Assembly (NCBI GenBank): GCA_044892505.1
Contig: CM097883.1
Location: 395,334,587-395,376,000, forward strand
DNA from: Schmidtea nova
Lineage: Eukaryota
Reading direction: 5' to 3'
DNA: 41,414 nucleotides
The notes beneath the pieces were generated by a model. It was not told the origin of the DNA and ran no database searches. It saw only the letters and a list, made by a program, of their open reading frames with translations. Positions 17,210 to 40,509 of this stretch are shown here, piece by piece. The first letter of the stretch is position 1. Each line of letters opens with the position of its first letter. A program made the position numbers and the translations under genes.

Positions 17210-18665
17210 ATTAGATTAGATTAGATTCATTTAATTTGTCAATTATTTTAAAATTGAAGGAAATTATATAACATATTTTAGTTTAATGAAACTTGATTTA
17301 TTTTGATAAAAACAATTAGATGTTTTCCAGACGGCCAGTTCTGGAACCAATAAGTGCAGGGCCCGATTGAAATTTTTAGTGGGCCCTCGATATATTAAAT
17401 ATTTAAAAAAAATGCAAATCACACATATATATATATATATATATTTATTGATTAATTTAAATATTTGAATAATTTATCCTTAATCGTAAAAAGCAATTTG
17501 CTATAAATTTCCAAAAATAATTTTTGTTAATTTTGGTGGTGATACGGGGCCCCGATTGGTCCCAATCGCTCCAGCGCCTAAAATCCGGGCCTGTAGACTG
17601 CTTGAATTTACAGAAAAATAAATACTTTTTCATTATTTATCTTCCAGTGACCAAGATAGTTCTAGAATATTAAATCATTCATTAGTATCGGGGTTGCAAC
17701 TTTCGTTGCCGATACCCCTATAACAAAAGTTAATAAGATAAAATAAGAATGAAACATTTATTTAAAAGATCTTCTTTCGCTTCTTTAAAACTGCTTGTAA
17801 GTAAAATCTGCTTGTTAAAATTCTTGTAGGTTAAAATGCTTCTTGGTTAAAATTGCTAACGTTGTAATTCTGCTTATTTAAAATCTTGTGCGTTATGAAT
17901 TTCAATTCTCCATTTCTCTTGTTATTTAAAACAAAACCTTTATAAATCTCTATATTTTTATTTAATATACATATGTATATATAATATATTCAAATTAATT
18001 ATTATTTGAAACGTTAAGTATTACTTTTCATTTATCATTTATACACATTTTTTGATTTTCGGATGACTGACTGATTTAAATAAGGATTTTTTAATGTGAT
18101 ATTAAATGCAATTTTTAAAAGCAGACGCGTTTCGCGATTATTTGGCTCTCATTAGTCTCATGTAAGAAATTTGATTTAACCGGAATCGAACCCAGCAACT
18201 TTGTAACCAGATCAATGGATGATGAGTTATTCATACGCCTTATTTGTAACATATCAAGTGTATTTCCATACATTTGATGAAAGCGGTTCAAATAAATTGT
18301 GATATTTGATTCCCATAGTAGTATGACTATAGATCAAAATTATTTTTCTGGTTTTTAAGTACAAAATATTTCGGCACTTGATAAAGGTTGTGCTAAAATA
18401 TTGCGTACTTAAATAACCAAAAAAAATTTTTTTTATCTATAGTCATATCATTATGAAAATTATTGATATAAATAAAAAGAGACAAAAAAAGATAATTGAT
18501 AATTATAACTGATTTGTCTTGTTAGGGGGATTGATCAAACTCTAGATACTGGTCATAATGTTATTTGGTTCGATTCAAGGTTGGATCGAGTTTCGTACAT
18601 GGCACTGATGAGAGCCTATAAGCTCGCAACGCATATGTCATTAGAAATCACATTAAATTGTTATG

Positions 18666-36321: not shown

Positions 36322-36902
36322 TATTCTTTTACTTCACTTTCTATCACTTTATCTTTGGCTTATCATCAGGATCCCCAAAAACTTCTAGTTGCCACAGAGC
36401 AATACTACAACATTTTTCATGAAGTGAAATAGTAAGGCAATGCATGTAAAACTTAGAACTTCTTTGAAAATTGAGTTTTATTTGAAAAATTATTTATCAG
36501 TCTTTCTAGAAATGGCTAAATACATCTAATATTAGCACTTTGGCGGACAGTAGAAATTAGTTGTTGGAAAGTGAAGGGACATTTCTGGGAACCAATTTTG
36601 CAACTATATATGATAACGGTTTGTATTTCAATTGAAATCTTACTAATTGCTCATACATAAAAATAAAATGATTTTTAAATGATCATTTAAATTATATTTC
36701 AATACTTTATTTCGCATCTGCATATGCTGTTTTGTCCCAATACCTGAAAAAAATAAACGACAGCATCTCCCGTCGGGTCCTTATATTTTCTAATTTTATC
36801 GGTGGCATAGATATTCGCCTCTGCGCACTTTAAGTGCTCAACAGAAACTGTTTGCAAGCGCACCCGGCTGCCTTAGCTTTATTATTTCAATCACTTGAAA
36901 TA

Positions 36903-37245
36903 TCTTTTCAAAAAACATTTGTCGGATGACTTTTTGTTTTTAACAAGTAAAGTGCGCAGAGGCGAATAGGAAATTCATCCGCCATGTTTGCAAGTTACAG
37001 ATTATCTGTAAGACCTTGCATATTTTATTGATGTGAAATGCAGTGTACCAGGTATGGTATTTAACAAAGTTGTTTCGACTTTGCTTTATACTTACCTGGC
37101 GCGGAGAGAAATTTTCGCGTCTCCTGCATAGCACGGATGAGAGCCAAAAGCTCGAAACTAGTCTGCTATTAAGGATTTGCACTGGGTATCACAAAGCTTT
37201 ACTTGTTAAAAACAAAAAGTCATCCGACAAATGTTTTTGAAAAGA
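36903..37245. mobile_element. Cassette bounded by ~50-bp near-perfect inverted repeats, containing a hammerhead
   Basis: 36903-36952 and 37197-37245 are reverse complements differing by one A in a homopolymer. Confidence 0.7.
37128..37169 (+). ncRNA. Type I hammerhead ribozyme motif (U4G variant)
   Basis: ATAGCA CGGATGA GAGC-CAAAA-GCTC GAAA C TA GTC / TGCTAT. Stem I is 6 bp, stem II is 4 bp and stem III is palindromic (ACTAGT). Predicted cleavage after C37163. Confidence 0.8.
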
Positions 37246-37358
37246 ATTTTATTCTTTATTAATAAACAAATAAACCTTTAATATTAAAATATTTGATTGA
37301 AAGTTTTCACTCAAAAAAGACTTTAAGGCAGAAAATAAAAAAATAAATAAATAAAATT

Positions 37359-37792
37359 TTAAAATGGACTAAAAAGGAGAAAATAGTTTTTCCTACACCA
37401 ACACAGGAAATTCCGAGAGCTTATGATTTTAAGATTTTAAAATCTATGAAAACATTTGTGAAATATAAAATGAAAAACGTGGAGCGCACGCATTTTTGAT
37501 GTAATATAGTTCCAATAACTACATAATACTTAAGAAGTTTAACTATGATGTTAAAAGAATTCACTCCTTAGTTAAAACCACTTGTGAGTTGAGCATAATT
37601 AAATTGTTAATGAAACATCGGAACTATATTATAATTTATACCTACAATGAATATATTACAGGCGCTCCACGTTTTTCATTTTAAATTTCACAAATGTTTT
37701 CTTAGTTTTTAAAATATTACAATCATAAGCCCTCAGAATTTTCTGTGTGGGTGTAGGAAAAATTATTTTCTCCTTTTTAGTCCATTTTAAAA
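37359..37792. mobile_element. Foldback/MITE with ~130-bp inverted arms
   Basis: 37359-37487 (AAAATGGACTAAAAAGGAGAAAAT...AAAAACGTGGAGCGC) and 37662-37792 are imperfect reverse complements around a ~175-bp AT-rich core. Confidence 0.8.
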
Positions 37793-38360: not shown

Positions 38361-40019
38361 TACAATCCATCCAATTCTTCAGTTAAAAATTACGGTACCT
38401 CAACAAGCAGTTCAATGTTTCGAAATTTTGAATCTTCATATCAATCAAAGTATAATGCAAACAAATCTTATTCAAAACCAATTTCAGAACAAATATCTAA
38501 AAACAGCTACGGAATTAGTGGAAAATACAATTCTAATGAATATAATTTAGAATATAAACCAGCAAGAAAATCGATAAGAGATTTATCGAATTCTCCATCT
38601 GTTAAGTATTCGTCAATGAGAATTAATGAAACATCGCCTTATTCTACATATAGCAGTCGACAAGGAAGTAACTCCTATCTTTCTGATAAGGATTCATCAA
38701 GGTATATTCCTAGTTCGATTTCCTCTCGAGAATCATTTATGAGTCCTTCAAATTCTTATTCAATAATTAACCGAGAATCAGTTCAGAAGGAAGCCGAAAC
38801 CAAAAATAAAGAACCAATACAAAGTCCTAAACAGTCAAGTTATGTATCCAAGTATAAAAGAAATTTTGATGACAATGCTGATGATTCACTTAATAAAAAT
38901 GAAGCTAAACAAGAAAATGAATCAAAATACGATATGATTAGTAAAACAAGTAGAGGCACGTGTACCCCTTTAAGTATTAATGAAGATAGTGATAAAGAAT
39001 GCAGCCTCATATCTCGAACAAGAACAAGAAGATATCCCAAACAAAATATTCGCATTGAAATGGGTAGTACAGTTCTAGTTGGAAATTTAACTCATATCGG
39101 AAAAGATATATCTACACAGACTAGTGATGATATATTTTTACCATCTCCAAGAATTAGGCAACCCTCTTATAAAAGTGGAAGTTCTAAGGGCTCAATTTCA
39201 ACATCGTCGTATTATAACCGCGGATTGGACAATAATAAATATGCTAGAACACCAAGAAGTAGCTGGAAACATCATGTTGCAGACACTAGTAACAATAATG
39301 TTCAGAAAATAGAGGAGAACAAGTATTTTGACGATTATTCCAAATCATCGTCACGGGAAAAACTCCAGTCTCCGAAATCGCCAACACACAAAAGAACAGC
39401 GCCTGTTGTGTCAATTAAAGATTCCATAGAAAAAGTAAATGAATGGCAAATTCAAAATCAAATTTTAGAATCGCAGAGCAATTCTAACAGATCTCCGGTT
39501 CCAAGATCACCCAATTATCATGACCTTCATGCTGTTACTAAGCCTTTTTACCAAAAAAAAAGTTCAACGGATGAAATTCAAATGACGGATAAAAGGGAGC
39601 ACTCAGAATCAAACAATAAAGAAAATAAAGTGAAGGAAAATCTATATTTAACGAAATATACCGATTTGGATTTACTCTTGGAAGATCAATTTATCATAAA
39701 TAAAGATAGCAAAAAGCAAAATTCAAATATTAAACTCATTTCTTACAATAGCAATCTTGAAGACTCGACATCTTTATCAAATGAATCTACGCTGCTATTT
39801 AATTCTAAAGCTTCTAAGGAAATTTTTAATTCTATGCCTATTGACTTGCAACATATTATTGTGAAATCCAAAAGCCGAAAGATCAAATTCAAAGATCTCA
39901 TAGATATTTCTAGAAATGAAAATTACATGCAAAAGTTCTCTGATGAAAGTGAAAGATCATTCAAAGGGTATATAAATGCTAGTGAGATGCTCGTAGATTT
40001 AGGCTTAAACATAGAAAAA
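38361..40019 (+). CDS. Large exon (553 codons) of an unidentified Ser/Lys/Asn-rich, probably disordered protein
   Basis: Open frame of 1659 nt in AT-rich DNA, with a ttttag acceptor at 38360 and a GTAAGT donor at 40020. Contains ORF 38415-40067. No family recognised. Confidence 0.85.
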
Positions 40020-40509
40020 GTAAGTTCAATTTTTCTTTTCATAATAATAAAAATAATTGATTTATAAAAATTAATTTACCACATCTTACCAACTTTTTAA
40101 TTTTATTGAATTCATTTTTATTGATTTTAATTTAAAAAAATAATACGATGAAAATCGCAGCGTATAATTAAATATACAAACTAATCGTTAAACCTAAAAT
40201 TAATATGTAATATCCGCACTAACATTAACGGCAAACACAAAAAATATAAACTAATAATAATACCGTATGTTATAATTTGCGAAAATTCACTATTTGTCCA
40301 CAACAATTAAAATAAAACGTATTCCTGTTGAGAACATTGAAATTATAGTACTTTTCACTTATAGAACACTTTAAAAAGACAGGAGAAAACAATTTAAAGC
40401 AAAAAACAACTGAATTATTAGGTATGCTTGTATAAAATTAAATCGTAGCCAACTAGATTTGTTTGAAAGTTAAATGAATTTTGTTTTTTTCAATTCCTGG
40501 TAATTTTTT

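What the first reader, a model, noticed from the sequence alone, without database searches (positions are those of the whole stretch)
37088..37169. U1 snRNA 5'-end sequence 40 nt upstream of a hammerhead on the same strand
Seen: ATACTTACCTGGCGC (37088-37102), then a GGAGA...TCTCC hairpin, then the hammerhead with predicted cleavage after 37163. Established: AUACUUACCUGG is the conserved U1 5' end that pairs with splice donors, and U1-headed SINEs are known from crocodilians. Inference: self-cleavage would release a ~76-nt RNA beginning with a donor-binding sequence but lacking the U1-70K loop and Sm site. Alternative reading: the same 12-mer is simply a perfect CAG|GTAAGTAT donor on the minus strand. 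The core has U4G, so this copy may be inactive.
Basis: partly seen in the sequence, partly recalled or inferred. Interest (0 to 1): 0.7.

Follow-up and report, generated by a model that had tools for sequence, protein, structure and literature searches.

The report
Dead hammerhead retrozyme copy with U1 fragment
This is one broken, rearranged copy of a roughly 380-base self-cleaving-ribozyme repeat (an animal "retrozyme") present in thousands of copies in this genome. The whole family carries the first 17 bases of the host's own U1 splicing RNA, buried in a hairpin inside the repeat, so it is a curiosity on a known kind of mobile element and not a U1-headed RNA system.

Summary
ATACTTACCTGG sits at 37088-37099, and a type I minimal hammerhead follows at 37128-37169, with cleavage expected after C37163 and G instead of U4 at 37135.

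The identity to this genome's own U1 runs 17 nt (37088-37104) and then stops. Nothing else in the element or upstream of the motif resembles U1 or its flanks.

The stretch belongs to a 380-382-nt repeat:
- The 17-mer has about 3,700 exact copies and the ribozyme 30-mer about 3,900.
- It forms tandem arrays of 40 or more units as well as dispersed copies.
- Dispersed copies are 5'-truncated, often joined to an inverted partial copy, and often end in (TAA)n or (TA)n. That is Penelope-style insertion.

The family consensus has the canonical CUGAUGA core. The window copy is permuted (unit 151-380 then 1-100), carries an inverted fragment at 36811-36952, and is mutated, so it is dead.

The 17-mer is internal to the unit, 59-76 nt before the cleavage site. 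Its first 12 nt are predicted to pair with CCAGGUAU(A/G)GUAU upstream. Copies do not begin at it (5 of 3,687). It is no better conserved than its pairing partner.

The predicted "76-nt U1-headed RNA" is therefore unsupported. This scan had already reached the same conclusion eight times on other DNA of this genome.

The parts
36811..36952 (-). Inverted, 5'-truncated partial copy of the same repeat (unit positions 187 down to 44), joined head-to-head to the forward copy.
   Evidence: blastn against a natural 380-nt unit taken from tandem locus L024: 90% identity. Inverted repeats I2 and I4.
36933..37249 (+). Forward copy of the repeat, circularly permuted: unit 151-380 (36933-37163), then unit 1-100 (37164-37249).
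   Evidence: blastn against the unit: 90% and 80% identity. 45 scored relatives at 91-94% identity out of 2,401 candidates.
37048..37060 (+). Left arm of the long hairpin, CCAGGTATGGTAT. It looks like a splice donor and pairs with the U1-like 12-mer.
   Evidence: MFE and partition-function partners. The window's G at the ninth base keeps the pair as G-U.
37088..37104 (+). 17 nt identical to the 5' end of this genome's U1 snRNA. nt 1-12 form the right arm of the hairpin; nt 13-17 open the next hairpin.
   Evidence: 17/17 to the C1 508-511 Mb U1 loci; 14 nt to the C2 array U1. 3,687 exact genomic copies, 0 for the reversed control.
37100..37119 (+). Small hairpin: CGCGGAGA, loop GAAA, UUUUCGCG.
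37128..37169 (+). Type I minimal hammerhead. Helix I 37128-33/37164-69, core 37134-40, helix II 37141-53, GAAA 37154-57, palindromic helix III 37157-62, cleavage site after 37163.
37135..37135 (+). U4G substitution in the catalytic core, private to this copy.
   Evidence: Among the 30 family copies carry CTGATGA; among the 31 aligned, 29 carry T at this position, the window copy G and L027 C.
37171..37172 (+). GG to AA changes that weaken the extension of helix I (family GGGG, here AAGG).
   Evidence: Alignment of 30 copies. The pairing is seen in the fold of an intact unit.

Best explanation
The stretch is a dead, rearranged insertion of a non-autonomous hammerhead retroelement, an animal non-LTR 'retrozyme' most likely moved by Penelope-like elements.

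How intact family members would work (inferred from the family's published biology):
- Tandem 380-382-nt units are transcribed as multimers.
- The minimal hammerhead has only 2 bp in helix III but a palindromic ACUAGU, so it needs a second copy to form the active double hammerhead. It cuts after GUC and gives unit-length RNAs with 5'-OH and 2',3'-cyclic phosphate ends.
- These fold into a highly paired rod. By analogy with published retrozymes, they are circularised and reverse-transcribed into new sites.

The U1 fragment:
- An ancestor of the family picked up the first 17 nt of the host's U1 snRNA. Probably reverse transcriptase switched onto the single-stranded 5' end of U1 and ran off it.
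- A later inverted duplication of this piece plus the 11 nt upstream made a 23-bp hairpin. Its other arm therefore looks like a splice donor.
- In unit-length RNA the U1-like bases are locked in that hairpin, 59-76 nt before the cleavage site. They are a passenger or structural element, not a free donor-binding end.

The window copy has one ribozyme only, U4G in the core, a weakened helix I extension and a permuted, inverted body. It should neither cleave nor yield a defined small RNA.
For: Family and copy number:
- 45 scored hits at 91-94% identity out of 2,401 candidates.
- Exact genome counts: 3,687 for the 17-mer, 3,899 for the ribozyme 30-mer, 3,541 for a 23-mer elsewhere in the unit. Reversed controls give 0.
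- Tandem arrays with 380-382-bp spacing, for example more than 40 units at C1:29.34 Mb.
- Unit length of 380 nt from cleavage site to cleavage site in L024. GC is 0.376.

Ribozyme:
- The family has a canonical core.
- An intact copy scores 27.6 bits, E=2e-4, on Rfam Hammerhead_1.

Structure:
- The unit's MFE is -131.7 kcal/mol, z = -8.75, and 0 of 100 shuffles fold as well.
- Head nt 1-12 pair with unit 266-278 in both linear and circular folds, with P(unpaired) <= 0.13.

Penelope-style insertion:
- Variable 5' starts and adjacent inverted 5'-truncated copies.
- 15 of 30 copies end in (TAA)n or (TA)n.
- These traits are described for Penelope-like elements in PMC8557442.

U1 origin:
- 17/17 identity to the host's U1.
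- No further likeness: 33 of 300 shuffles score as well.

The head is internal and not specially conserved:
- Only 5 of 3,687 instances lack the family bases upstream.
- The left arm has 3,568 exact matches against 3,687 for the head.

Window copy anatomy.
Against: - No expression, cleavage or circularity data could be obtained.
- No Penelope reverse transcriptase was found next to any sampled copy, so the mobilising partner is inferred from insertion style only.
- Hammerhead scores stay below Rfam gathering thresholds.
- The capture route (template switching, then inverted duplication) is inference.
- The block from the head through the ribozyme was the best-conserved part in a sample of 30 copies, 98-99% against 91-96%. 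This could hint at a role for the head, although genome-wide counts do not single it out.
Confidence: 0.8

Rival explanations
1. The U1 head marks a transcription start. On this reading the unit carries an snRNA-type promoter captured with the first 17 nt of a U1 gene, as reported for newt satellite 2. Transcripts would begin at the head and the ribozyme would release a 76-nt leader whose first 10 nt are free, like U1.
For: - Precedents: newt hammerhead satellite 2 is driven by an snRNA-type promoter, and the schistosome hammerhead repeat by a pol III promoter (both cited in PMC2220036).
- A second hammerhead family in this window has a tRNA box-B-like piece upstream of its ribozyme.
- If an RNA did start at the head, nt 1-10 would be unpaired with P 0.9-1.0.
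- The element has TATATA at -29. The host's snRNA genes have TATA at -28 to -34.
Against: - Eleven host U1, U4, U5 and U6 upstream regions share an ATG-centred box (AAATG in seven of them), at -67 to -76 in ten and near -88 in one. The element has only TTGCATAT at -71, which lacks the invariant A.
- There is no sequence likeness to any snRNA upstream region; all |z| <= 1.6.
- TATA-like words are common in DNA that is 70% A+T.
- Copies do not start at the head.
- No RNA data are available.
Confidence: 0.08
2. The 12-mer matters on the other strand, where it reads as a perfect CAG|GTAAGTAT splice donor. Antisense insertions would then feed cryptic donors to host genes, and in this window it could be a used donor.
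For: The reverse complement of the 12-mer is a consensus donor by construction. The family scatters about 3,700 such sites through the genome.
Against: - This reading does not explain identity to U1 nt 13-17, which play no part in donor pairing.
- The would-be upstream exon would lie inside the repeat. Its 80-aa open frame has no Pfam match.
- The neighbourhood is transposon debris: mariner-type transposase fragments and a nearby HTH-domain ORF.
- No read evidence could be obtained.
Confidence: 0.04
3. Chance or convergence. On this reading the arm is simply the complement of a donor-like sequence in the other arm of a palindrome and was never copied from U1.
For: - The complement of any strong donor equals U1 nt 1-11.
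- The hairpin extends beyond the U1 part into 11 non-U1 nt.
Against: - The match continues through G12 and CGCGG to nt 17 in a genome that is about 30% G+C. It follows this species' own U1 variant.
- My own rough estimate is that five G/C bases matching by chance has odds of about 1e-4.
- The left arm is the imperfect one, with a bulged U and an A/G variant, while the right arm is the exact U1 sequence.
Confidence: 0.05

Closest known systems
Metazoan non-LTR retrozymes (Cervera & de la Pena 2020, PMC7229834)
   Same: Type I hammerhead in short, low-GC tandem repeats of 150-450 bp, non-coding, with a highly self-paired unit, present in thousands of copies. That paper names platyhelminths among the phyla that carry such repeats.
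   Different: Carries 17 nt of host U1 snRNA inside the unit. I found no paper combining hammerhead repeats with a U1 piece. Circular RNA was not shown here.
Minimal dimeric hammerheads of Penelope-like elements (Cervera & de la Pena 2014, PMC4209133; insertion style in PMC8557442)
   Same: Very short helix III with a palindromic loop. Insertions are 5'-truncated, often carry an adjacent inverted truncated copy, and lie next to microsatellites.
   Different: No reverse transcriptase or GIY-YIG gene was found beside the sampled copies. The element is about 380 nt and non-coding.
SINEU, snRNA-headed SINEs of crocodilians (Kojima 2015, PMC4494074)
   Same: A retroelement that has incorporated a U1-derived sequence that includes the snRNA's 5' end.
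   Different: In SINEU the U1 or U2 piece is the 5' head of a poly(A)-tailed SINE. Here it is only 17 nt long, lies inside the unit and is not at copy termini.
Newt satellite 2 and schistosome Sm-alpha hammerhead repeats (Coats 1994 and Ferbeyre 1998, as cited in PMC2220036)
   Same: Hammerhead-bearing repeats that borrowed small-RNA gene parts: an snRNA-type promoter in newt and a tRNA-like pol III promoter in schistosomes.
   Different: Here only transcribed U1 bases are present. No convincing proximal sequence element could be found.
U1 snRNA gene (Rfam RF00003)
   Same: The first 17 nt are identical.
   Different: No stem-loops I-IV and no Sm site. The covariance model gives no match at E <= 10.

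Membership tests
Metazoan non-LTR retrozyme | Type I hammerhead with a canonical catalytic core | tested here: met
   The family has CUGAUGA...GAAAC..GUC with an open helix I. Rfam Hammerhead_1 scores 27.6 bits, E=2e-4, below its gathering score of 34. The window copy itself fails at U4.
Metazoan non-LTR retrozyme | Short tandem repeats of 150-450 bp, from dimers to large multimers | tested here: met
   380-382-bp spacing in arrays of more than 40 units, and in dimers L014, L024 and L025. The window copy is a single permuted unit.
Metazoan non-LTR retrozyme | Low GC (<50%); no LTR, PBS, PPT or coding capacity | tested here: met
   GC is 0.376. The only open frame, 80 aa, has no Pfam match. LTR, PBS and PPT were not searched formally.
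Metazoan non-LTR retrozyme | Highly self-paired unit RNA | tested here: met
   MFE -131.7 kcal/mol, z = -8.75.
Metazoan non-LTR retrozyme | Expressed as self-cleaved linear and circular RNA | not testable with these tools
Penelope-like element derivative | Minimal hammerhead with helix III of 1-2 bp and a palindromic loop | tested here: met
   A-U and C-G pairs around UA within ACUAGU. Cofolding did not reproduce the double hammerhead, so the dimer is inferred.
Penelope-like element derivative | 5' truncation, adjacent inverted truncated copy, microsatellite target | tested here: met
   compared with the description in PMC8557442.
Penelope-like element derivative | Shares sequence with an autonomous element encoding RT and GIY-YIG | tested here: inconclusive
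   No RT was found in the flanks of the sampled loci or in the window. No genome-wide search was made.
U1 snRNA gene | Matches the U1 covariance model (stem-loops, Sm site) | tested here: not met
   No RF00003 hit at E <= 10 in 36600-37700. No likeness beyond nt 17.
snRNA-headed SINE (SINEU) | snRNA-derived piece forms the 5' terminus of the copies | tested here: not met
   Only 5 of 3,687 head instances lack family sequence upstream. Copy starts are spread over unit 1-161.
snRNA-headed SINE (SINEU) | 3' poly(A) tail | tested here: not met
   Copies end within the unit at about 55-60 or 91-100, next to (TAA)n or (TA)n, and not in poly(A).
snRNA-type promoter unit (newt satellite 2 style) | Proximal element at the host-specific distance, plus TATA | tested here: inconclusive
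   The host box (ATG-centred, AAATG in most genes) lies at -67 to -76. The element has TTGCATAT at -71 without the invariant A, and TATATA at -29. No homology to snRNA flanks.

The most novel reading that the evidence does not exclude
The U1 head is not a fossil. Either it marks an snRNA-type start site inside the unit, so that each array emits a short leader with a free U1-like 5' end. Or the hairpin of a U1 mimic paired to a donor mimic is a working module of the abundant retrozyme RNA, for example one that titrates or recruits U1 snRNP when it opens.
Probability: 0.08. Interest if true: 0.7.

Novelty: new member of a known kind. Interest (0 to 1): 0.3.

Why it matters
The finding shows that hammerhead retrozymes can pick up and keep pieces of host small RNAs, here 17 nt of U1. 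This adds to the older cases of an snRNA-type promoter in newt repeats and a tRNA-like promoter in schistosome repeats.

It also has a practical side. About 3,700 perfect U1 5' ends, and the same number of perfect antisense splice donors, are scattered through this genome. They will confuse snRNA and splice-site annotation.

As a biological system it remains a known kind of element, and this particular copy is inert.

Tried and rejected
- Rfam over the whole window at gathering thresholds found nothing.
The sequencing-run search gave four runs of one study, none on record as RNA.
- The U2 family search in the own genome failed twice on the server.
- Local alignment of U1 beyond nt 17 to the rest of the unit, on both strands, scored no better than shuffles.
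- Alignment of the 85 nt upstream of the head to twelve snRNA upstream regions showed no likeness.
- In a small sample the head looked better conserved than its partner arm. Genome-wide counts rejected this: 3,687 against 3,568.
- I looked for a subfamily with a different head. Of 20 perfect ribozymes lacking a perfect 17-mer, 13 are point variants and 7 are truncated or rearranged before the head.
- Cofolding two ribozyme segments did not give the canonical double hammerhead, so it is not used as evidence.
- Open frames flanking the copies gave only a mariner-type transposase.
- The Coats 1994 paper is not held. It is cited second-hand.

Full report
**Observation**

- ATACTTACCTGG lies at 37088-37099. 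It is the only match in the window even with one mismatch allowed, against 0.09 expected.
- A type I hammerhead follows 40 nt downstream:
  - helix I at 37128-37133 paired with 37164-37169;
  - core at 37134-37140;
  - helix II at 37141-37153;
  - GAAA at 37154-37157;
  - a two-base-pair helix III inside the palindrome ACUAGU;
  - the cleavage site after C37163.
- The core reads CGGAUGA, with G at 37135 where U4 belongs.
- Rfam finds nothing at gathering thresholds. A permissive local scan gives Hammerhead_HH9 at 24.3 bits, E=0.002. A loose hammerhead pattern matches once in the window against 0.09 expected.

**What the stretch belongs to**

A BLAST of 36953-37196 against the window's own genome (1.25 Gb, three very large chromosomes) returned 45 scored hits at 91-94% identity out of 2,401 candidates.

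Exact-word counts over the genome, all with 0 for the reversed controls:

| Word | Exact matches |
|---|---|
| 17-mer head | 3,687 |
| 30-mer ribozyme | 3,899 |
| 23-mer elsewhere in the unit | 3,541 |

- Many matches lie in tandem arrays with 380-382-bp spacing, for example more than 40 units near C1:29.34 Mb and a head-to-head array near C1:1.15 Mb.
- A natural dimer (L024) gives a unit of 380 nt from cleavage site to cleavage site. Its GC is 0.376.
- Among the 30 family copies, 24 have the canonical CTGATGA core. In the alignments the family base at this position is T, and the G at 37135 is private to the window copy.
- An intact copy scores 27.6 bits (E=2e-4) on Rfam Hammerhead_1. This is below the gathering score of 34, as expected for a minimal helix III.

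**Anatomy of the window copy**

Measured against the natural unit:
- 36933-37163 is unit 151-380.
- 37164-37249 continues as unit 1-100.
- 36811-36952 is an inverted piece, unit 187 down to 44, joined head-to-head. This explains inverted repeats I2 and I4.

Apart from U4G, the GGGG that extends helix I in intact copies reads AAGG here, at 37171-37172. There is only one ribozyme. A helix III this short is expected, from the literature on newt, schistosome and Penelope hammerheads, to need a second copy to form an active double hammerhead. This copy should therefore be inert.

**How the family moves**

Across 30 loci:
- Copies start at variable unit positions (1-161), run through the ribozyme and stop within about the next 30-130 nt, most of them near unit 55-60 or 91-100.
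- About a third have an adjacent inverted 5'-truncated copy.
- 15 of 30 end directly in (TAA)n or (TA)n.

High 5' truncation, adjacent inverted truncated copies, partial tandems and a bias for microsatellites are the published hallmarks of Penelope-like elements (PMC8557442). Those elements' pseudo-LTRs carry minimal hammerheads (PMC4209133). Animal retrozymes have recently been argued to be their non-autonomous derivatives (bioRxiv 10.64898/2026.07.22.740005).

I found no reverse transcriptase beside the sampled copies or in the window. The partner element is therefore inferred.

**The U1 piece**

- The genome has bona fide U1 genes, RF00003 up to 111.8 bits.
- The variants on C1 at 508-511 Mb begin with exactly the 17 nt found at 37088-37104. 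The large U1 array on C2 near 313 Mb matches for 14 nt.
- Beyond nt 17 there is no likeness on either strand; 33 of 300 shuffles score as well. The U1 covariance model gives no hit at E <= 10.
- The five extra bases CGCGG are not involved in donor pairing and are improbable in DNA that is about 30% G+C. The piece was therefore copied from U1 and is not just the complement of a splice donor.
- Every family copy examined that reaches this position has the piece or a point variant of it. Of 20 perfect ribozymes without a perfect 17-mer, 13 are single or double substitutions and 7 are truncated or rearranged before it.

**Is it a head?**

No. It sits at unit 305-321, 59-76 nt before the cleavage site.
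- Only 5 of 3,687 exact instances have two non-family bases just upstream. Two of these are ordinary truncations and three are junctions with inverted copies.
- In the intact unit, folded as linear or circular RNA, nt 1-12 pair with CCAGGUAUAGUAU at unit 266-278 with P(unpaired) <= 0.13. nt 13-17 open the next small hairpin. The same holds for the window copy, where an A-to-G change keeps a G-U pair.
- The hairpin is 23 bp long and includes 11 non-U1 bases upstream of the head. The simplest history is therefore an inverted duplication of a segment that already contained the U1 piece. That would also explain why the other arm looks like a splice donor. This history is inference.
- Genome-wide, the head (3,687) is not better kept than its partner arm (3,568, with two subfamily positions left degenerate).

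**The most interesting rival**

Hammerhead repeats have borrowed small-RNA gene parts before: an snRNA-type promoter in newt satellite 2 and a pol III promoter in the schistosome repeat (cited in PMC2220036). This window also holds a second, decayed hammerhead family with a tRNA box-B-like piece upstream of its ribozyme.

I therefore asked whether the unit carries an snRNA-type promoter with its start at the head.
- Upstream regions of host U1, U4, U5 and U6 genes share an ATG-centred box (AAATG in most of them), at -67 to -76 in all but one, and, in the U1, U4 and U5 genes, a TATA box at -28 to -34.
- The element has TATATA at -29. At -71 it has only TTGCATAT, which lacks the A that is invariant in all eleven genes.
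- It has no overall likeness to any snRNA flank.
- If an RNA did start at the head, its first ten bases would be free.

The idea is not excluded, but it has no positive support. I give it 0.08.

**What could not be done**

- The run search found four runs of one study, none on record as RNA.
- Expression, cleavage, circularity, a start at the head and use of the minus-strand donor therefore all remain untested.
- No stretch of N was met, and nothing here looked human.

**Earlier notes of this scan**

My first stated reading was already 'retrozyme with a U1 fragment'. One search then showed eight earlier follow-ups on other DNA of this genome with the same conclusion. They call the organism a planarian flatworm, which I did not verify.

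I re-derived their main claims independently:
- the unit size;
- thousands of copies;
- 17 nt of host U1;
- the hairpin.

I added:
- the test of copy termini;
- the comparison of the two arms;
- the snRNA-promoter test;
- the microsatellite and inverted-copy evidence for Penelope-style insertion.

**Verdict**

This is a new member of a known kind (a platyhelminth retrozyme family) with a small unpublished curiosity, a captured U1 5' end. This particular copy is dead.

Noticed in passing
window 18118-18641: A divergent pair of decayed hammerhead elements of a different family, each with a tRNA T-arm/box-B-like GGTTCGATTCC-type piece about 25-30 nt upstream of the ribozyme. ARAGORN finds no tRNA in the window. 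This recalls the pol III-driven schistosome Sm-alpha repeat.
   Followed up: partly
window 38415-40067 (+): An intact 550-aa open reading frame in very AT-rich DNA. It has no Pfam family, and the best protein-atlas score is 0.77.
   Followed up: partly
window 37357-37792: A 131-nt inverted repeat pair, 92% complementary with 174 nt between the arms, right beside the retrozyme copy. It looks like a foldback or MITE-type element.
   Followed up: no
G000:C1:508.46-508.47 Mb and 510.99-511.00 Mb (L031-L036, L061-L062): Small-RNA gene clusters in mirror-image arrangement hold U1 and U5 genes, including divergent U1 variants that start AAACTTACTTGG or AAACTAACCTGG. U1, U4 and U6 also occur as long tandem arrays on C2 (about 313, 331 and 333 Mb).
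   Followed up: partly
upstream of host snRNA genes (L033, L035, L036, L061, L063, L065, L067, L073): A shared ATG-centred box (AAATG in most genes) at -67 to -76, plus TATA at -28 to -34 in the U1, U4 and U5 genes. This is a candidate proximal sequence element for this species' snRNA genes.
   Followed up: partly
window 6905-7429 (-) and 9615-9983 (-); L002:539-1171: Mariner-type transposase fragments (PF01359) at 6905-7429 and in L002, and at 9615-9983 an ORF with helix-turn-helix domains (PF13936 and related). The neighbourhood is transposon-rich.
   Followed up: no
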